Source of the DNA: Octopus bimaculoides
Lineage: Eukaryota
NCBI RefSeq assembly: GCF_001194135.2
Contig: NC_068983.1
Location: forward strand, 53,775,666 to 53,839,665
DNA length: 64,000 nucleotides
Reading direction: 5' to 3'
Shown here: positions 11,565-51,685 of the stretch, piece by piece
Layout of the letters: every line of letters begins with the position of its first letter
Position numbering within the stretch: the stretch's first letter is position 1
The notes under the pieces: generated by a model
Seen by the model: the letters and a program-made list of their open reading frames with translations, nothing else
Told to the model about the DNA's origin: nothing
Databases searched by the model: none
Position numbers and translations under genes: made by a program

Positions 11565-12392
11565 CAAATCTTTTGTCTTACCATCCCTGTTGTATTCCTG
11601 TGAAACTTGGACTTGTTAGGAAGAGCATTTTAAACTGTTAGAACAATTCCACCAAAAATGCCTTCATTGCATTTTTAAAATTAAATGAAGTTCTTTTACT
11701 CCAAACACAGATGTTCTTGCTTCTGCAGGCATCACCTCAATTAAAGCTATGATTTTAAGGAACCAATTGAGAAGGTGTGGCCATATTGTTCGAATGGCAG
11801 ATGAACGCATGCGGAAACAGCTGTTTTATGGTGAGCTTGCAGAGGGGAAACAAATCGACATAAACCTAAAAAATGGTTTAAGGACAGCATAAAGACTACT
11901 ATGAAGTCACTTGGAATGGTTCCAGAAAATATAGAAACCCTTGCTTCGGATCAAGTTGGATGGTAAACAAAGGTGTGAAGTGGAGTGAAAGCATTTGAAG
12001 AGGCCAGGATAATGAAAGTAAGACTCAAAAGAGATCTAAGGAAGAATGTAACGATCGAGAAGGTGAATGACAATGACCTTTTTGAGTGCACAGTCTGTGA
12101 CAGACCATGCCTCTCTTTGGCTGGCCTCAAATCTCATTTGCGAACACTTGGAAAACGAACCTCCACCAACTATTCTGACTATATGTCTGTGCACACCTTT
12201 GGATGCAGTGTATGCCAAAAGGTTTGCAAATCCAACGGAGGCCTCAAAAGACATGTTGAGATCCACAAAGAGCAGAACTTATCTGGAGGTATTGGTGGTC
12301 CAAATCTGAGGTGCAATCTATGCGGGTGTTTTTTCAGAACATTGTTTGGTTGAAAAAGCCACATCAGACGCCATGATGGTGCTAAGGTGTAG
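11565..12392 (+). pseudogene. RTE/BovB-like LINE 3' fragment ending in three C2H2 zinc fingers
   Basis: VLPSLLYSCETWT...LEQFHQKCL...QLRRCGHIVRMADERMRKQLFYGEL (RT thumb and C-terminus). It is followed by CTVCDRPC..SHLRTL, CSVCQKVC..RHVEIH and CNLCGCFF..*KSHIRRH, with several stops. Confidence 0.9.
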
Positions 12393-12589: not shown

Positions 12590-12995
12590 TATATTTTACT
12601 TGTTTCAGTCATTAGACTGTGACCATGCTGGAGCACCACCTTGAAGAATTTTTAGTCAAATGAATCAACCCCAGTACTTATTTTTTCTATAAGACTGATA
12701 CTTATTTTATTGGCTTCTTTTGCCAAACTGCTAAGTTATGGTGATGTAAACAAACCAACACCAATTGTCAACTGGTGCTGGGGGACAAATACAAGCATAA
12801 TGACACACACACACACACACACACACACATGCAATGTGTTTCTTTCAGCTTCCATCTTCCAAGTTCACTCACAAAGCTTTGGTTGGTCTGCAGCATTAGT
12901 AGAAGACATTTGCCTAAGGTGCCACACATGCAGCAGGACTGAACCCAGAACCATGTGGTTGAGAAGCAAGCTTATTACCACACAGCCACTGTAGC
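12590..12995 (-). mobile_element. SINE family B
   Basis: Reverse complement of the family B head, core and tail. Confidence 0.85.
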
Positions 12996-13619: not shown

Positions 13620-13815
13620 CAGTGTATATGTGGCTGACCCCTAAGGGTGGATGTTACTGTTACTTTTAGCCCCAGGAGAACATCTCCTCCAGCTGGCTAT
13701 CGACATACATCTGTGTCCTGTCTGTATTTGCAAAGGGAAGTCATCCTTCCCATCTTGATCTGCGATACATACGGACTCAAGTTTCTGGGTAGTTTCCTGT
13801 CCTCAGCATACTGAC
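13620..13815 (-). mobile_element. Diverged relative of the hammerhead-bearing ~355-bp repeat unit
   Basis: Shares gatgttactgtt..tagc..acatctcctccagctggct..tgtgtc..gtatttgc..gtttctgggtagtt with 14419-15058. Confidence 0.75.
13768..13812 (-). ncRNA. Type I hammerhead motif, helix II decayed
   Basis: Minus strand: gtatg-CUGAGGA-caggaaactaccca-GAA-ACUUGAGU-C-cgtat; cleavage triplet GUC. Confidence 0.65.
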
Positions 13816-14629
13816 TTTTAATGAATCATAGATTACATAGCAAAAACAAAAATACAGTGTTAAAAAAATATCCATCCAAGTGAAAGTTATAAGACAACAA
13901 AACAAAATAAGCAAAACTAATGAAAAAAATTAACTGGAAACTAATATATATAATTAGAGAATAGACATCAATATGTATTCATATTTCTATGCTCCTGTGA
14001 AATGTTTTTGTAAAAATGTTTCATAGGATTGTAACCAAAACATCTTGCATACTATTTCTGGTTATTTTACATTCTTGCAGCGCTGTTTGCAAATATTCAT
14101 ATATCACCTTTCAAATATATTTATTCTTTCCTATTTAAAATAATACAAACTTACCTCACTTTCTTTCCTGGGGTTTCAAGTTTCTTTTCATTGTGATATT
14201 CAGCAGTGTTTGTTATGAATACCCACGGTTAAATGGAGCGTGAGATTATTAATTGTCAAATTGCTGTGGCAATTATTATGCAAATAGGGTGTATGCTTGT
14301 CAGTGTGAAAAGAGTTTCAACGAAAAATTCTATCCAGAACAACAACACAAATTTATGCATACATACCTACATAGAAGATATATACTATATATGCTGATAT
14401 ACATATATATATATGCTATATTAAATTTCTAAGCGAGAGGTAAACAGTAACAGTATGGAATTGTAAAATATATTTGCCAACTAAATGTGGCAGCCCCGTA
14501 GAGGACGATGTTACTGTTGTTATTAGCTCCAGAAAGACATCTCCTCCAGCTGGCTAACAACACACTGTCTGTGTCCCATTAGTATTTGCAAGGAGAGGTT
14601 ATCACTCCCATCTCTAGCCTTACGTGATA

Positions 14630-14674
14630 CGCATGGACCCGGGTTTCTGGGTAGTTACCCATCTTCAGTGTGTG
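14630..14674 (-). ncRNA. Type I hammerhead, unit 1 (core, helix II and helix III intact; helix I mismatched)
   Basis: Minus strand: cacaca-CUGAAGA-tgggt(aact)accca-GAA-ACCCGGGU-C-catgcg. Confidence 0.8.
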
Positions 14675-14982
14675 ATAGTCACCAGCTAGTGATGAAAACT
14701 CATTCCACTCGCAAAATACTATATGCTTTTTCTAGCGACAAATTGTCGCTGATCTTGAAAAAGGAGAAATAATCTATATTAAATCTCTGAGCAAGAGGTA
14801 AACAGTAACAGTACGGAATCGTAAATTGTATTTGCCAACTAAATGTGGCGGTCCCATAGAAGACAATGTTACTGTTGTTTTTAGCTCAAGGAAGACATCT
14901 CCAGCTGGCTGATGACACTGTCTGTGTCTGATTAGTATTTGCGAGGGAAGGTCATCGCTCCCATCTCTAGCCTTATGTGATA

Positions 14983-15027
14983 CACACAGAGCCGGGTTTC
15001 TGGGTAGTTACCCATCTTCAGTGTGTG
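14983..15027 (-). ncRNA. Type I hammerhead, unit 2 (helix I perfect; one helix III substitution)
   Basis: Minus strand: cacaca-CUGAAGA-tgggt(aact)accca-GAA-ACCCGGCU-C-tgtgtg. Confidence 0.8.
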
Positions 15028-15058
15028 ATAGTCACCAGCTAGTGATGAAAACTCATTC

Positions 15059-16838
15059 CGTGGAGGGCATGCCTGAGAGGGCCACCACAAATTGTAGTGG
15101 TCCCAGTACAGTTCTCTGTGGGACTCCGCTGAGAATTGGTGTCTCTTCAGAGTTAGCACCATTGGCTACAGCTGTCTGACTCCTGCCCTTCAGAAAGTCA
15201 TTCAGCCACTCTCCCAGTTTCCCAGTAATACCAAGGTTTTGCAGCTTGTGACGTATCATGCCATGATCAACCTTGTCAAAGGCTTTGGCAAAGTCGATGT
15301 ATATCACGTCAACAGCTGACTGGTTTAGCTATTGTTTCAGAACCCAGTCAAAGTGCTACAGCATCTGTATAAGGCAGCTTATCCCTGGACAGAAGCCATG
15401 TTGTATGTTTGTGAGAAGTTTGTTTTCTTCTAGGAATGTGATCATCCTTTCTCTTACAATGCGTTCCATTGTCTTGCTAACATGTGAGATCAGAGAGGTG
15501 GGCCTGTAGTTTTTAGCATCTGCTCTGCTCCCTCCTTTATGGAAAGGGCATATTATACCCTCTTTTAGCATGTTGGGAAGTTTACCACATGCAAGGAAAC
15601 TCTGCAAGAGCCTTTTTACAAGTGTTTAAGAGAACAGCCAGGAGTCCATCTGGGCCTGTTGCTGAGTTTAATCTCATCTCATCAATAGCCAATATTACAT
15701 CCTCTTCTGTTATGTTGATGTAATCAATGGTTGCCTATTTTCCAAATAGATTTGTTACATTGAAAAACTCTTCAGGCTTGTTTATTTGCATATTTTCCAG
15801 TGGAGAAGTAAAATCACTTCAGAATTGTTTATTTTGTGCTTCACTTATCTTCCCCAGGTCTGCAGTTAGTGAGCCACTTTTACCAAATAGTGGTCCTATG
15901 TTATAGTGTACTGAGGCAAACTCCTTTGTCAATGTTTAGAAACTTTAGGATTTCTTTTATATTTTTGACTGCCCAGATTTCTCTTTCTTCTCTTCCTTTT
16001 TCATGGGAGATTTTGAGATTATTTTCAATCTCAAAGAGTTCTTCTGTCAGGTGGAAATTCAGTCATTGAGATGTTTGTTTAAACAATTCGAGATCTTTAT
16101 TCTCTGCTGCATGAGTATTCTCCTGTGTCGAGGAATGATGTTTTTGTGTGTATTGGCTCTCTTCTCTGGGACATATTTAATGCATATGGCTCGCATTATT
16201 GACATGAATTTATTGAGTTTCATATCTATGTCTTGCATAGAGAAGCTTTTACGCCAGTCCTGTTGGAGTATCTGTTTTTCCAGTGACTTCCAGTCAGCCT
16301 CACAGAAATTTAGGCTGGATAGGGTTTGAGTGCCATCTGTGCAGAGTTTATCTTCAGTTAATTCCAAGCCATATATTGTCAGTTCTATCATGTTATAGTC
16401 TGAGAATATTGTCTGTGATATATTTACATTGTGGATGATTTCCACATTGTTTGTAAAACAGAAGTCCAGGATATTTTTGTGCCTGGTTGGAGAGAGTATG
16501 ATCTGCTCCATGAATAGCATTTTCATAAGATCAAATAAAGACTCTGCTTGATTTCGCTCTTTGTGTGTCATTCCTAGGGTTATGTTGCCCTCAAGCCACC
16601 TGATGTTGGGGACTTGAAGTCACCCATCAGGAGTATAGTAGTATGTTGATCCAATTGTGTTAGTACTTCCTTTATCGCACTGAGGCTTTCCTCAAATTTT
16701 CCATCATGATTTGAGGCAACAGGTGGGTGATATAGTGTGCATATCACTATATCAAGTTGCTTTAGATGAACTACGAGTGAGTCACACACCAAGTTTGAGT
16801 TTGGAAGCAGGGTTAATGGTGTGACATCTTCGCAGATA
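15059..16838 (-). pseudogene. CR1/L2-group LINE ORF2 fragment (AP endonuclease plus N-terminal RT), truncated at both ends
   Basis: ICTLYHPP..LLMGDF; SPTRHKNILDFCFTN..SDYN; HKGGSRADAKNYRPTSLISHVSK; YIDFAKAFDKVDHG; SGVPQRTVLGPLQF. Frameshifted. Confidence 0.92.
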
Positions 16839-16842
16839 TATA

Positions 16843-18435
16843 TTAGGTGGAGCGAAAAATGCAACTTTCAAAATTGGTAACCAAGAATCGATATTTTGAT
16901 GCAAATTAAGGTTAAAAGAAAGGTGTATAAAGAACTTTGTGGTTAAGTATATTTTTCAGGCTCTGCAATGCAATTTTTCTAAATTGCTATTTTTGGTCGA
17001 ATTTTGGCTTTCATGGATTATAAGTCGTAACGATTAATATTTCTACGTAGCTGAAGGCAAAACATTAAATATATTATCCATAAAAGGTTGCATACCAAGT
17101 TTCAATATAAATGACTAATATCTTGAGGTTCTGCATTGACAACAAAGAGAATGGGAGTGTGAACTTCTCTCCAGTGCCGCTGCAATGGTCGTTGTGTGTG
17201 GACGTATGTCATACATGTGTGAAGTTTTCTGCTTTGCACCTTGACTTTAGGCCATTGTATTAAAATTAACGATCGTGTTAAATTTAGTGTTCTTTACATT
17301 TAGTGATGACTCACAAGCAAATAACGTGTCATGATATTGAATGCCCGGCATTTGGTACTGCATGTGATTTTAGCGAGCGAGTTTTGCCAACTTACAAGGA
17401 CGTACTAAAATGTGTTTTATTTGAATGAGAAAAAGAAAAGAATGTAGTTAAGAAAGATCCTTCAATTAAGCAAATTGTCAAGATTGTAGCAGAAAAGATA
17501 ATTCTTCTTTGGCAAAAGGTATTCTTCCTTTGTGTTACAATTGAGTCAATTAAACCGAAAATCTTAAACCAAGAATTACTAAAATCTGTGAAAAATAGAA
17601 AAAAATGTGCCATCGTTTCAAACAAAGGGTAATGTGTTTAAAAAACAATGCAACAAAAGATTTATTTGACATTTCTTGTTGCAAGTGCAACTCCTTTAAA
17701 AGCTGCAGTTGTAGTGGAGACAAAAATGTAGCAGAGAGAGAAGAAAATTTTTTACAGGATCAACAGACAAATTGAAAAAATGATCATTGGCAGAATAGAT
17801 CAAGCGGTATCTGAAGAGAGCATTAAGAGGTTGATTAGAGAGAATCGGCCAGATTACAGTCACCCTTCTATGTCAGCAAAGGTAAATTTAAGATTTTCAG
17901 TTTAACTGACTCAGTCATAGCACAAGGGATGGATGCCTTTTTCCAAAGAAGAATTATCTTTTCTGCTACAATCTTGACAATTTGTTTAATTTATTTTAAT
18001 ATATGTGTAATCTAGACCTCATGTAACACATATATTTGGAAGCCATCTCATATGCAACACATATATAAAGAAAACAAAGTTGCAAAGTCTATTTATGTCA
18101 CATAATTTCGAAATTTTAAGTATGTTGCGGAGCCTGAAGATATAAATTTTAGAGCTTGAGATTTTAACACGCTTATTTTTCAAAGATTTTGCAAAAGAAA
18201 ATTAATTCGTAATAATGAATGTAAAAATAAAATGAGGAATGGCAAACGAGTTATAAATTGATTTTTTTTTGCTCATTATTCAAAATTTCAAGTTGGCTGC
18301 GGAGCCTGAAGATGTAGATTTAAGAACTTCAGATTTTAACACAATTGTTTTTTTAAGATTTCGCAATAGAAAATAGATTCTTAAAACCATATTTTGAAAA
18401 TCTGTGTAAAATGTACATTTTTTGCTCCACCCTAA
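16843..18435 (+). mobile_element. Internally deleted TIR DNA transposon, tentatively Sola-like
   Basis: TIRs TTAGG(G)TGGAGC(G)AAAAATG and catttttgctccaccctaa, flanked by TATA. The internal remnant at about 17382-17870 reads LPTYKDVLKCVL...LFDISCCKCNSFKSCSCSGDKNVAEREENFLQDQQT..MIIGRID. The superfamily call is from recalled motif similarity only. Confidence 0.6.
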
Positions 18436-26237: not shown

Positions 26238-26356
26238 GTTTACGGCCATATCACATTGAAAACACCGGTTCTCGTCCGATAACCGAAGTTAAGCAACATC
26301 GAGCCTAGTTAGTACTTAGATGGGTGACCGCTTGGGAAACCTAGGTGCTGTAAACG
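26238..26356 (+). rRNA. Full-length 5S rRNA-like copy, probably retroposed
   Basis: GTTTACGGCCATATCAC...CCGAAGTTAAGCAAC...AGTACTTAGATGGGTGACCG...GCTGTAAAC. Helix I pairs fully (GTTTACGGC/GCTGTAAAC) and boxes A and C are present, but helix II has two mismatches. Confidence 0.9.
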
Positions 26357-30568: not shown

Positions 30569-30781
30569 GTAAATAAAATAAAAACGTAGAACAAACACAA
30601 AATAACAACAACGTGAGGACGTGGTACATGTGAAGTATTAGCTGACGCTCAGGGAAGGAAAGAAAGGTAGTTTAACGTTTCGAGCAAAGCTCTTCTTCAG
30701 AAACAGAGGAAAATCCAATAGGAAAAGAAGACGGAGAAAAAGAAATCGCCAACGATTCACATGAGGTTACATTTTGAAATG
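30569..30781 (-). mobile_element. Penelope-like terminal-repeat remnant between (TA)n and (GATA)n
   Basis: Contains the minimal hammerhead at 30670-30704; ends in a T-rich tail at the (TA)n tract. Confidence 0.6.
30670..30704 (-). ncRNA. Minimal type I hammerhead ribozyme (intact motif)
   Basis: Minus strand: gttt-CUGAAGA-a-gagc(ttt)gctc-GAA-ACGU-U-aaac. Four-nt palindromic helix III; triplet GUU. Confidence 0.78.
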
Positions 30782-30814
<33 letters not shown>

Positions 30815-32082
30815 AGATAGGGATGGCCGGTCTATAGGGATAACCCTGAGTTTCACGTCCACTTGCTAGAGAGGCCATAGGTGACCATGCTGGGGCACTG
30901 CCTTGAAGAATTTTTATTGAATGATGAATCGAGCCCATTACTTCTGTACTTTTTTTTCTTGTTTTAAAGCCTGATAATTATTCTGTCGGCCTGTTTTACT
31001 GAATTGATAAGTTACGGGGACATAAACACAACAACGCAAGCACACACACGTGTGGGTGAGACGGGCTTCTTTCAGTTTCCGTCTACCAAATCCACTCACA
31101 AGGCTTTGGTTGACTTGAGGCTATAGTAGAAGACACTTGCCCAAGGTGCCACGCAGTGAGAGTGAACCCGGAACCATGTAAGCAAGCTAATTACCACACA
31201 GTCACTCTTGCGCCTACTTCTGAATATTATTTTATTAATTAGATTTTTTCAGATTTTTTTTTTTTTTCTAGTTTTTGTAACTAATTTCCAAATCAAATAA
31301 AAATGTTTGAATTGTTTTAGTTTTCGTTATTGTTATCTATTTTTGATTATCATGTTGTTCTTCATCTTCTTGTTGATGACATTAATGCAAGTACTGCTGA
31401 TCCAAGAGTTCTTGGACCGTTTATCTTATTTATCTATTGCTACATGTTATTATGTAACAAACAACGAACAAAGTAAATGAAAAATTAACAAAATAATATA
31501 TAATTATTAAAAATAAAAGTTTTAAAAAAAACTTACGTTTTCGTGTGTCACTTCCTTATATATGCTTATATTTATATATACACATGAACATATACCACTA
31601 TAAATATATACACATATATATGTATGTGTATAAATTTATACGTATAATAAAACTATACTTGTAATCTCAAAACCAATCGCTATTTATGATATTCCTAGTT
31701 TCTCTTTAAACCAAGAACCTGTTCAAATTAAAGGTGTATATATATATACATGTACATATATATAATAGAAGTAATCTTTAGTTAAAAGAGAAACCTTTCA
31801 TTAGCATGTTGACATCGACGACGACGGTGACGATGATGACTTGGTAATAGATCTGGTTTTTATTTTTTTTTATTTTTTTTTAGTGCTTTTCTTTTCTGGT
31901 TTTTTTTTTTTATTTATTTTTGTATCACAAAAGTTTTTTTCTTTTCGTTTTCTTTTTTATTATTGGATGAACTAAATAAGCTTAAAGTAAAAAGAAATGT
32001 TCAACGCTAAATTTCTGCTTGACCAAAGTGAATGAGGCCAACTATTTATTATTTGTCATTATTGTTACTTTTATTATTATTG

Positions 32083-33991: not shown

Positions 33992-34048
33992 TAACCCTAA
34001 CCCTAACCCTAACCCTAACCCTAACTCTAACCCTAGGGTTAGGGTTAG
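33992..34048. repeat. Interstitial telomeric repeat with strand switch, (TAACCC)n then (TTAGGG)n
   Basis: taaccctaaccc...ctaactctaaccctagggttagggttag immediately before a 646-N gap. Confidence 0.95.
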
Positions 34049-50719: not shown

Positions 50720-51620
50720 TATTCAGTTTTATTTCAAGATTTCTTACCAATAGAGAAAGAATCAGTTTCTAACCTAGATCCAAGGTTCCTTCATTGGAAT
50801 TTCAACATCAATGTGCAGATTTGTATGTCTTATGTCTATTGTCATGCATTTAGTTGCATATCTAGACATGCTTATTTATATTTAAATGTAAACTTCTGGA
50901 TAGTTTTACAGATATTTTTACAGTTCTAGTGATGGCTTAGATATGTATCCTTCGAATTAGCTTTCTCCTTTCGGGTTTTGAGAAGCCTAATTTCTCAATA
51001 TCGGTATTTAGGCAGTGTGTTACGTATTCCAGGGCCCCAATAATTACAGGTATAAATCTGAACTTGTAATCTGGATAGAGTAACTGCAGATTTCTCGATA
51101 GTTCAGTGTAGGTATTCTTTTTCACTAATCTTCAGCTTTATGCTAACATCCACTGGGCAGCTAATTTCCACAACTGTACAGTTTCTCTTCTCTATCCCAA
51201 ATCATTATATCAGGTCTGTTGTGCTTACATTTTATTGGGGTCTTCATTGGGACATTCCACCAGTACTCCCTTTTATTATGAGTAACTATGGCTTCTGCCA
51301 CGCTATGGGTTCTTATTTCTTTGTTCTTGAGGTTATCCTTCCAACGGATTTCATTATAGAGTGTTCTAGCTACATCATGTCTCTTCGGTAGATAATACCG
51401 TGATGACATTTTCGAACAACTGCTTATGGTGTGGGTAATATCTTCGGTGTTAACTCCGCAAAGTCTGCATCGGTTGTCACATTTTACTGCTTTTCCTGCA
51501 TCTCTGTCCCTTTTGTGCATCAGGTACTTGGTTGATATTTCCTGTTCCTGGATTGCAAACGCATACTCTTCAAAGTGGGAGGTTGTAATCCGGCTATTGG
51601 TCCATGATAGACTGCTTTCA
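50720..51620 (-). mobile_element. R4/Dong-like non-LTR retrotransposon 3' part (CCHC knuckle plus REL endonuclease)
   Basis: CRLCGVNTEDITHTISSC..YYLPKRHDVAR..WWNVP..KHNRPDIMIWDRE..RNLQLLYPDYKFRFIPVIIGALE; ends on a (CATA)n tract. Confidence 0.9.
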
Positions 51621-51685
51621 TGATTAATGTTACTATCACGAGCTATTCTTATAATGTAACGGTTCTAATGGCAATACATCAAAGT

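What the first reader, a model, noticed from the sequence alone, without database searches (positions are those of the whole stretch)
14419..15058. Tandem ~355-bp repeat with one hammerhead per unit: candidate retrozyme producing a 353-nt circular RNA
Seen: two head-to-tail non-coding units, each with CUGAAGA-UGGGU(AACU)ACCCA-GAAACCCGG(G/C)UC on the minus strand. The predicted cleavage sites (14989/14988 and 14636/14635) are 353 nt apart. The copies carry complementary defects (unit 1 in helix I, unit 2 in helix III), so the consensus is a perfect ribozyme, and the 8-nt palindromic helix III suits pairing between adjacent units. Known: metazoan non-LTR retrozymes are tandem units of a few hundred nt with type I hammerheads, whose monomers circularise, and they have been reported in bivalves. 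Inference: a cephalopod retrozyme family. I cannot tell whether it is already described.
Basis: partly seen in the sequence, partly recalled or inferred. Interest (0 to 1): 0.9.

Follow-up and report, generated by a model that had tools for sequence, protein, structure and literature searches.

The report
Decayed hammerhead-ribozyme repeat in octopus-like DNA
A 643-bp non-coding stretch holds 1.8 head-to-tail copies of a 353-nt element, each copy with a hammerhead self-cleaving ribozyme; it looks like a worn-out copy of an animal 'retrozyme', a known class of small mobile elements not yet reported in cephalopods in the papers I could search.

Summary
On the minus strand, unit A (15058-14706, 353 nt) is followed by unit B (14705-~14416, the first ~290 nt), which ends in a (TA)n-like microsatellite. 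Each unit has a complete type I hammerhead core. The GUC cleavage sites are exactly 353 nt apart. No such motif appeared in 200 shuffled windows. The excised monomer is unusually structured (z = -5.1), non-coding and 41% GC. A third, degenerate partial copy lies 600 bp away.

This fits the published description of metazoan non-LTR retrozymes, which are thought to depend on Penelope-like elements. The flanking LINE's best relative is an Octopus protein.

The locus itself looks dead. The units differ by 12%, mostly by transitions, many of them at CpG sites. Each ribozyme has one damaged helix. There are only 1.8 units.

Other cautions:
- Pair 10.1-11.1 is U-A, not the canonical G-C.
- No Rfam hammerhead model matches.
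- No other family copies could be retrieved.
- Transcription, cleavage and circles are untested.

Verdict: probably a new member of a known kind, of moderate to low interest. One oddity is unexplained: the array directly abuts a LINE cut in mid-reverse-transcriptase.

The parts
14706..15058 (-). Unit A: complete 353-nt repeat unit, including a 63-nt tail (unit positions 291-353) that unit B lacks
   Evidence: Self-BLAST and alignment; sequence read
14416..14705 (-). Unit B: the first ~290 nt of the unit, 88% identical to unit A, cut off at ...AATTTAATATAG
14983..15027 (-). Hammerhead A (45 nt). Helix I is CACACA/UGUGUG (6 bp, perfect), and it can extend with bulges across 15035-14975. Core is CUGAAGA...GAAA. 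Helix II is UGGGU-AACU-ACCCA. Helix III is ACCCGGCU (15.2-16.2 is a C.C mismatch). C17 is at 14989.
14630..14674 (-). Hammerhead B (45 nt). Core and helix II are the same as in A. Helix III is the perfect palindrome ACCCGGGU. Helix I is CACACA/CAUGCG (3 of 6 pairs mismatched). C17 is at 14636.
14636..14988 (-). Predicted 353-nt monomer between the two cleavage sites. 41% GC; linear MFE -108.5 kcal/mol (circular -103.2); 63% of bases paired. Helices I and II of the ribozyme are present in the MFE fold.
   Evidence: 100 shuffles: -80.7 +/- 5.4, z = -5.1, none as low
14380..14415 (.). (TA)n-like microsatellite directly after the truncated end of unit B; presumed AT-rich insertion target
   Evidence: Sequence read. 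AT-rich or microsatellite targets are reported for Penelope-like elements (PMC11167929, PMC8557442).
13625..13826 (-). Copy C: an old partial copy of the same family, about 70% identical over unit positions ~38-219. Its hammerhead is degenerate (13812-13768): core CUGAGGA...GAAA, helix III ACUUGAGU, helix II with only 2 pairs left, helix I GUAUG/CGUAU.
15062..16971 (-). Decayed LINE with endonuclease and RT domains, stops and frameshifts. Its RT homology stops at the 5' end of unit A, just before the YxDD box. It is context, and may or may not belong to the same insertion event.
   Evidence: Pfam RVT_1 and Exo_endo_phos_2; tblastn with relatives ends at 15065-15056; best relative is an Octopus 'jockey-like' protein

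Best explanation
The stretch 15058-14416 (minus strand) is a 1.82-unit head-to-tail genomic copy of a 353-nt non-coding element with one type I hammerhead ribozyme per unit. I read it as a decayed member of a non-LTR retrozyme family, that is, a non-autonomous hammerhead repeat dependent on Penelope-like elements, in an octopus-like genome.

The mechanism below is inferred from the published families; none of it is shown here. Active arrays of the family are transcribed as oligomers. The ribozymes cleave after GUC (C17). Because helix III is a 2-bp stem on a palindromic CCGG loop, two neighbouring ribozymes probably pair through the 8-nt palindrome ACCCGGGU and cleave as a dimer. The released 353-nt monomers carry a 5'-OH and a 2',3'-cyclic phosphate and are circularised by a host tRNA ligase into a strongly self-paired circle. 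Unprocessed multimers or circles are then reverse-transcribed by a retroelement enzyme, most likely from a Penelope-like element. That enzyme nicks AT-rich DNA and starts inside the RNA, which yields partial tandems such as this one, ending in a (TA)n tract.

This particular locus is most likely inactive. Both ribozymes carry a damaged helix, and the copies have diverged by 12%, mostly by transitions, many at CpG sites.
For: - Exact duplicated ribozyme, with cleavage sites 353 nt apart.
- All invariant core positions are present in both units, helices I and II are as expected for metazoan type I ribozymes, and no comparable motif appeared in 200 shuffles.
- Cofolding two unit-B ribozyme segments gives the intermolecular 8-bp ACCCGGGU helix, with both helix II hairpins intact.
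- The monomer MFE has z = -5.1 and 63% of bases paired.
- The unit is non-coding.
- Size (353 nt) and GC (41%) fall within the published ranges: 170-400 nt and under 45-50% GC, with mussel units of 350-390 bp (PMC7229834).
- A third, diverged copy retains the ribozyme layout. Two helix I pairs are changed on both sides (A-U to G-C, C-G to U-A). 79.5% of cells are paired, against 7-51% when the partners are slid.
- The array ends in an AT-rich microsatellite as a partial tandem, as described for Penelope-like elements.
- Substitutions between A and B are 25 transitions to 5 transversions, with 10 transitions at CpG sites. This fits neutral decay in a methylated genome.
Against: - No Rfam hammerhead family matches, at the gathering threshold or at E <= 10, even on 91-nt slices.
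- The pair next to the core (10.1-11.1) is U-A, whereas G-C is described as highly conserved (PMC4209133).
- Each ribozyme has one defective helix.
- There are only 1.82 units.
- Covariation rests on three sequences and does not exceed the shuffle control (287 of 500 shuffles did as well).
- No further copies were found in any collection I could reach, so family size and arrangement are unknown.
- There are no transcript data.
- Units A and B are identical over the first 68 nt but 13.5% diverged afterwards. That does not fit one circular RNA copied 1.8 times and then left to decay neutrally.
Confidence: 0.62

Rival explanations
1. It is a relic of a Penelope-like element itself: a partial tandem of pseudo-LTR sequence whose internal ORF has been deleted, not a separate small non-autonomous family.
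For: - Penelope-like elements carry type I hammerheads in their pseudo-LTRs, form partial tandems and prefer AT-rich or microsatellite targets.
- A 2026 preprint argues that animal retrozymes derive from these pseudo-LTRs.
- A second, minimal Penelope-type hammerhead candidate lies at 30700-30674 in the same window.
Against: - The two ribozymes are only 353 nt apart, and the 63 nt of 'internal' sequence holds no ORF remnant.
- The only RT nearby is a LINE with an AP-type endonuclease; no GIY-YIG or Penelope-type RT was seen next to the array.
- This ribozyme has a 6-bp helix I and a looped helix III, i.e. the 'canonical metazoan' layout rather than the minimal Penelope variant.
- I did not scan the whole window for Penelope ORFs.
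Confidence: 0.2
2. It is a single insertion of a SINE-like element carrying a hammerhead (as with Sm-alpha of schistosomes), or a fragment of satellite DNA, that was duplicated at the DNA level. On this reading the tandem says nothing about rolling-circle or multimer reverse transcription.
For: - Only 1.82 units are present.
- Copy C is a lone partial copy.
- A and B are identical for 68 nt and then 13.5% diverged, which points to DNA-level recombination or gene conversion.
Against: - The junction between units is clean and head-to-tail, with no spacer or target duplication.
- The end of unit B lies inside the unit and next to a (TA)n tract, which fits reverse transcription starting inside the RNA.
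- Satellite arrays would normally be much longer.
Confidence: 0.12
3. It is a hammerhead look-alike that arose by chance in an ordinary repeat and has never cleaved.
For: - No Rfam match.
- Non-canonical U-A at 10.1-11.1.
- In one reading frame the CUGANGA box forces an A-[D/E]-[D/E] peptide, so chance resemblances of this sort do occur.
Against: - 0 of 200 shuffles gave a comparable motif.
- The layout is retained in a 70%-identical third copy, with two pairs changed on both sides.
- The palindromic helix III, 353-nt tandem spacing and strongly folded monomer all agree with the known class.
Confidence: 0.05

Closest known systems
Non-LTR retrozymes of invertebrates, e.g. Mytilus galloprovincialis (Cervera & de la Pena 2020, PMC7229834)
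   Same: - Short head-to-tail units (350-390 bp in mussel, 353 bp here).
- One type I hammerhead per unit.
- Low GC and no coding capacity.
- No LTR, PBS or PPT were noticed on reading the sequence; I ran no specific search for them.
- A strongly self-paired monomer.
   Different: - No sequence similarity could be tested.
- Only 1.82 decayed units are present here, against arrays and thousands of copies in mussel.
- Pair 10.1-11.1 is U-A.
- circRNA expression is shown in mussel and untested here.
Amphibian satellite 2 / axolotl retrozymes HHR_Amex1 and HHR_Amex2 (330-350 bp units)
   Same: [quoted passage not shown]
- Unit length is about 350 nt.
   Different: - The host is a vertebrate and copy numbers are huge (about 120,000).
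- The conserved loop 1-loop 2 tertiary contacts reported there cannot be recognised here.
Hammerheads in the pseudo-LTRs of Penelope-like elements (Cervera & de la Pena 2014, PMC4209133; Frangieh et al. 2024, PMC11167929)
   Same: - Type I topology and a palindromic helix III.
- Partial-tandem organisation.
- Insertion at AT-rich or microsatellite DNA.
- A 3' end that lies inside the unit, consistent with internal initiation of reverse transcription.
   Different: - There is no RT/GIY-YIG ORF between the repeats.
- Helix I is 6 bp and helix III has a loop, whereas the minimal Penelope variants have a 4-5 bp helix I, no loop 3 and an extra nucleotide before 10.1.
Sm-alpha SINE-like hammerhead repeats of Schistosoma
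   Same: A non-coding element of about 330 nt carrying a type I hammerhead, dispersed in the genome.
   Different: No box A/B-like motif was evident on reading the unit; I ran no scan, and my knowledge of these elements is from memory.

Membership tests
Hammerhead ribozyme, type I | Invariant core: C3 U4 G5 A6 N7 G8 A9 ... G12 A13 A14, the A15.1-U16.1 pair, and H17 (not G) at the cleavage site | tested here: met
   CUGAAGA ... GAAA ... (G/C)UC is present in both units
Hammerhead ribozyme, type I | Three helices around the core, with helix I open-ended and helices II and III closed | tested here: inconclusive
   Helix II is 5 bp in both units. Helix I is 6/6 pairs in A but 3/6 in B. Helix III is 2 bp plus a CCGG loop in B but only 1 bp in A. 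No single copy has all three helices intact.
Hammerhead ribozyme, type I | Conserved G10.1-C11.1 pair at the base of helix II | tested here: not met
   The pair is U-A (CUGAAGA-U...A-GAAA) in units A and B. Its conservation is stated in PMC4209133.
Hammerhead ribozyme (Rfam hammerhead families) | Match to a curated covariance model | tested here: not met
   No hammerhead hit at the gathering threshold or at E <= 10 on 901-nt and 91-nt slices
Hammerhead ribozyme, type I | Site-specific self-cleavage | not testable with these tools
   Needs in vitro transcription of monomeric and dimeric constructs
Metazoan non-LTR retrozyme (PMC7229834; working definition in the 2026 bioRxiv preprint 10.64898/2026.07.22.740005) | Head-to-tail repeats with a type I hammerhead in every unit | tested here: met
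   There are two ribozymes in two consecutive units 353 nt apart, but the array has only 1.82 units
Metazoan non-LTR retrozyme | Unit of about 150-450 bp, GC under 45-50%, non-coding | tested here: met
   353 nt and 41% GC. No frame exceeds 81 aa, and there are no protein relatives.
Metazoan non-LTR retrozyme | Monomer RNA is highly self-paired | tested here: met
   MFE -108.5 against -80.7 +/- 5.4 for shuffles, z = -5.1; 63% of bases paired
Metazoan non-LTR retrozyme | Many genomic copies, from dimers to long multimers | tested here: inconclusive
   There are three copies in this window. No host genome was available, and scans of viral, metagenome and prokaryote collections found nothing related.
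Metazoan non-LTR retrozyme | Expressed as unit-length linear and circular RNA | not testable with these tools
   No transcript data could be reached
Penelope-like element (autonomous) | Telomerase-like RT plus GIY-YIG endonuclease ORF between the two ribozyme-bearing pseudo-LTRs | tested here: not met
   Only 353 nt separate the ribozymes and no ORF lies between them. The adjacent RT is a LINE with an AP-type endonuclease.

The most novel reading that the evidence does not exclude
The LINE fragment and the ribozyme array form one chimeric retrocopy. On this reading a reverse transcriptase began on retrozyme RNA at the (TA)n target, copied 1.8 units, then jumped to a LINE mRNA in mid-RT and copied it towards its 5' end. 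That would be a fossil showing that a jockey-like LINE enzyme, not a Penelope-like element, mobilised a retrozyme. Which enzyme moves animal retrozymes is an open question, left between 'LINEs or PLEs' in PMC7229834.
Probability: 0.08. Interest if true: 0.6.

Novelty: new member of a known kind. Interest (0 to 1): 0.33.

Why it matters
If the family is confirmed genome-wide, it would extend hammerhead retrozymes, and the abundant small circular RNAs they produce in mussels, corals and salamanders, to cephalopods. In the searchable literature I found only an uncommented count of Rfam hammerhead hits in the giant squid genome paper (PMC6962438) and no description of a retrozyme. The ribozyme variant is missed by every Rfam hammerhead model because of its U-A 10.1-11.1 pair and 2-bp helix III. 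Annotation pipelines therefore probably undercount such elements. The locus itself is a dead copy and has little functional weight.

Tried and rejected
1. Rfam scans at the gathering threshold and at E <= 10, including 91-nt slices, found no hammerhead family.
2. Tandem Repeats Finder did not report the repeat; self-BLAST and alignment did.
3. I looked for other family copies through pseudo-peptides of the unit in the 5.8-billion-protein collection, using an antisense 81-aa frame and a sense 77-aa frame. There were no hits.
4. DNA pattern scans found nothing related. Viral contigs gave 0 hits. Metagenomes gave 0 with the family-specific pattern. Prokaryotic genomes gave 0.
5. Exact-product look-ups of the LINE ORF and of the Octopus relative returned nothing on record. 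The contig of relative P0002 (L121, 796 bp, from a metagenome) is just an RT fragment.
6. I tested whether the 5' part of the unit, including the ribozyme, continues the LINE RT: VFITSW..HTED..RNP against VVVTSYADD..RNPED, with copy C reading YAEDRKL. I rejected this.
   - A collinear global alignment gave p of about 0.02, but the local alignment was not significant.
   - A profile of the RT segment ranked the unit peptides below 2,000th of 15,910 window peptides.
   - The A-[D/E]-[D/E] match is forced by the CUGANGA box in that frame.
7. I found no target-site duplication around the array alone or around LINE plus array; the longest shared words are 9-mers of TA-rich sequence.
8. The missing 3' part of the LINE RT is not found after the array or anywhere else in the window. 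A simple insertion of the array into the LINE is therefore excluded.

Full report
**Observation**

Read on the minus strand, 15058-14706 is a 353-nt unit (A). It is followed directly by 14705-~14416 (B), which repeats the first ~290 nt of A at 88% identity. B then runs into a (TA)n-like microsatellite. The 30-mer CTGAAGATGGGTAACTACCCAGAAACCCGG occurs exactly twice in the window, at 15021-14992 and 14668-14639, with none expected by chance. Tandem Repeats Finder did not list the repeat. The array is 1.82 units, not two full ones.

**The ribozyme**

- Both units have every invariant hammerhead core position (CUGAAGA ... GAAA ... UC).
- Helix II is 5 bp (UGGGU/ACCCA) with an AACU loop.
- Helix III is 2 bp closed by the palindromic loop CCGG, so that A15.1-U16.1 spans the 8-nt palindrome ACCCGGGU.
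- Helix I is open, which makes this type I.
- Unit A has a perfect 6-bp helix I (CACACA/UGUGUG). It can extend through two bulges to about 12 pairs. A G-to-C change breaks the 15.2-16.2 pair.
- Unit B has the intact palindrome but three mismatches in helix I.
- A descriptor matching the unit-A ribozyme found nothing in 200 dinucleotide-preserving shuffles of the window.
- Cofolding two unit-B ribozyme segments gives, as the minimum-energy structure, the intermolecular 8-bp helix III with both helix II hairpins preserved. This is the dimeric conformation described for metazoan type I hammerheads with a weak helix III (PMC4209133; PMC7229834).

Three cautions apply to the ribozyme:
- The pair next to the core (10.1-11.1) is U-A, whereas G-C is described as highly conserved.
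- No Rfam hammerhead model matches at any threshold, even on 91-nt slices.
- Cleavage cannot be tested here.

**The unit**

The RNA between the two cleavage sites (14988-14636) is 353 nt and 41% GC. Its linear MFE is -108.5 kcal/mol, against -80.7 +/- 5.4 for shuffles (z = -5.1). In that fold 63% of bases are paired, and the region before the ribozyme pairs with the region after the cleavage site. Helices I and II of the ribozyme are present in the fold. The unit has no frame longer than 81 aa, and two pseudo-peptides found no relatives. These features match the published description of metazoan non-LTR retrozymes: 150-450 bp head-to-tail units, low GC, a type I hammerhead per unit, and highly self-paired circles of 170-400 nt, with mussel units of 350-390 bp.

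**A third copy**

At 13806-13625 a partial copy (C) is about 70% identical to unit positions 38-219.
- It keeps CUGAGGA ... GAAA and a helix III of 2 bp plus a tetraloop (ACUUGAGU), but only 2 pairs of helix II remain.
- Against unit A, two helix I pairs differ on both sides (A-U to G-C, C-G to U-A).
- Overall, 79.5% of cells are paired, against 7-51% when partners are slid by 1-3 columns.
- With three sequences the shuffle control is uninformative (287 of 500), so this is weak support.
- Using C as outgroup, the ancestral helix I was probably CGCACG/CGUGCG. The A and B versions follow from CpG-to-TpG/CpA decay. This is my inference.

**Age and state of the locus**

A and B differ by 30 substitutions (25 transitions, of which 10 are at CpG sites) and two indels. 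This pattern fits neutral decay, so the locus is probably inactive. Its two 'complementary defects' are ordinary mutations rather than a design.

One detail is unexplained. The first 68 nt of A and B, up to two bases before the cleavage site, are identical, while the remaining 223 nt differ by 13.5%. The chance of that under a uniform rate is about 6e-4 or less, by my calculation. It argues against a single circular RNA being copied 1.8 times and then decaying evenly. It points instead to gene conversion or recombination, or to a template made of different monomers.

**Context**

Immediately 5' of unit A lies a decayed LINE with AP-type endonuclease and RT domains. Its closest named relative is an Octopus 'jockey-like' protein at 76% identity, which supports a cephalopod host. 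RT homology runs down to about 15062 and stops at the array, just before the YxDD box. The rest of the RT is nowhere in the window. The array therefore did not simply split the LINE. Three possibilities remain:
- insertion with deletion of the target;
- a later deletion;
- a template switch from retrozyme RNA to LINE mRNA.

I found no target-site duplication.

I also tested whether the 5' part of the unit is itself the continuation of the RT, and rejected the idea. A collinear alignment gave p of about 0.02. The local alignment was not significant, and a profile of the RT segment ranked the unit far down the list.

The 3' end of the array lies inside the unit, next to (TA)n. This matches what is reported for Penelope-like elements: AT-rich or microsatellite targets, internal initiation of reverse transcription, partial tandems and use of unprocessed RNA.

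**Comparison with what is known**

The element behaves like, and meets the testable sequence criteria of, a metazoan non-LTR retrozyme. A 2026 preprint argues that these derive from the pseudo-LTRs of Penelope-like elements. It is not an autonomous Penelope-like element, since no ORF lies between the ribozymes. In the searchable literature I found no description of retrozymes in cephalopods. The only mentions were 235 Rfam 'hammerhead 1' hits in the giant squid genome paper and the presence of Penelope-like elements in cephalopods. The present variant would not be among such Rfam hits.

**What could not be done**

No cephalopod genome or transcriptome was reachable. Pattern scans of viral, metagenome and prokaryote collections, and the protein-based tricks, found nothing related. 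Family size, array lengths, intact ribozymes, expression and circularity all remain untested.

**Verdict**

This is a real, non-random, hammerhead-bearing partial tandem. It is most likely a dead copy of a retrozyme-type family in an octopus-like genome, and so a new member of a known kind. Interest is moderate to low. The LINE junction is the only feature that might bear on an open question, namely which enzyme mobilises animal retrozymes.

Noticed in passing
window 30674-30700 (-), inside a ~215-bp stretch between a (TATC)n tract and a (TA)n tract (30575-30795): A second, unrelated hammerhead candidate of the minimal Penelope type: CUGUUU-CUGAAGA-A-GAGC-UUU-GCUC-GAAA-CGU-U|AAAC. It has an extra nucleotide before 10.1, a G10.1-C11.1 pair, the palindrome ACGU with no loop 3, and a 4-bp helix I. 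A descriptor written after seeing it found 0 hits in 300 shuffles. There is no other copy in the window.
   Followed up: partly
window 14991-15058 vs 14638-14705 (-): The first 68 nt of units A and B are identical, while the following 223 nt differ by 13.5%. The switch falls two bases before the ribozyme cleavage site. Gene conversion or a chimeric template are possible; the cause is unexplained.
   Followed up: partly
window 15035-15062 (-), and copy C 13790-13812 (-): In the LINE's reading frame the unit reads VFITSW..HTED..RNP, and copy C reads YAEDRKL, loosely resembling the RT segment VVVTSYADDTK..RNPED that should follow the junction. Profile and local-alignment tests do not support homology. 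The CUGANGA box forces A-[D/E]-[D/E] in that frame.
   Followed up: yes
window 26238-26356 (+): A full-length 5S rRNA match (104 bits, Rfam RF00001), single copy in the window. I did not examine whether it is a gene, a pseudogene or a 5S-derived repeat.
   Followed up: no
window 33992-34048 (+), next to an N gap: Telomere-type repeat (TAACCC)n that turns directly into its inverse (GGGTTA)n at a scaffold gap. It is either an interstitial telomeric repeat or an assembly artefact.
   Followed up: no
window ~12850-12990 (-); similar sequence near 31040-31100 (-): A repeat that, from memory, resembles the abundant tRNA-derived SINE of octopus genomes (…GGTTCTGGGTTCAGTCC…GGCACCTTAGGCAAATGTCTTCTAC…). 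Related peptide strings recur in several ORFs across the window.
   Followed up: no
window 51164-51664 (-) and 11985-12353 (+): An ORF with a weak match to the zinc-binding domain of reverse transcriptases (zf-RVT, E = 0.0026, below Pfam's cut-off), possibly another LINE remnant. A separate 122-aa ORF has C2H2 zinc fingers.
   Followed up: partly
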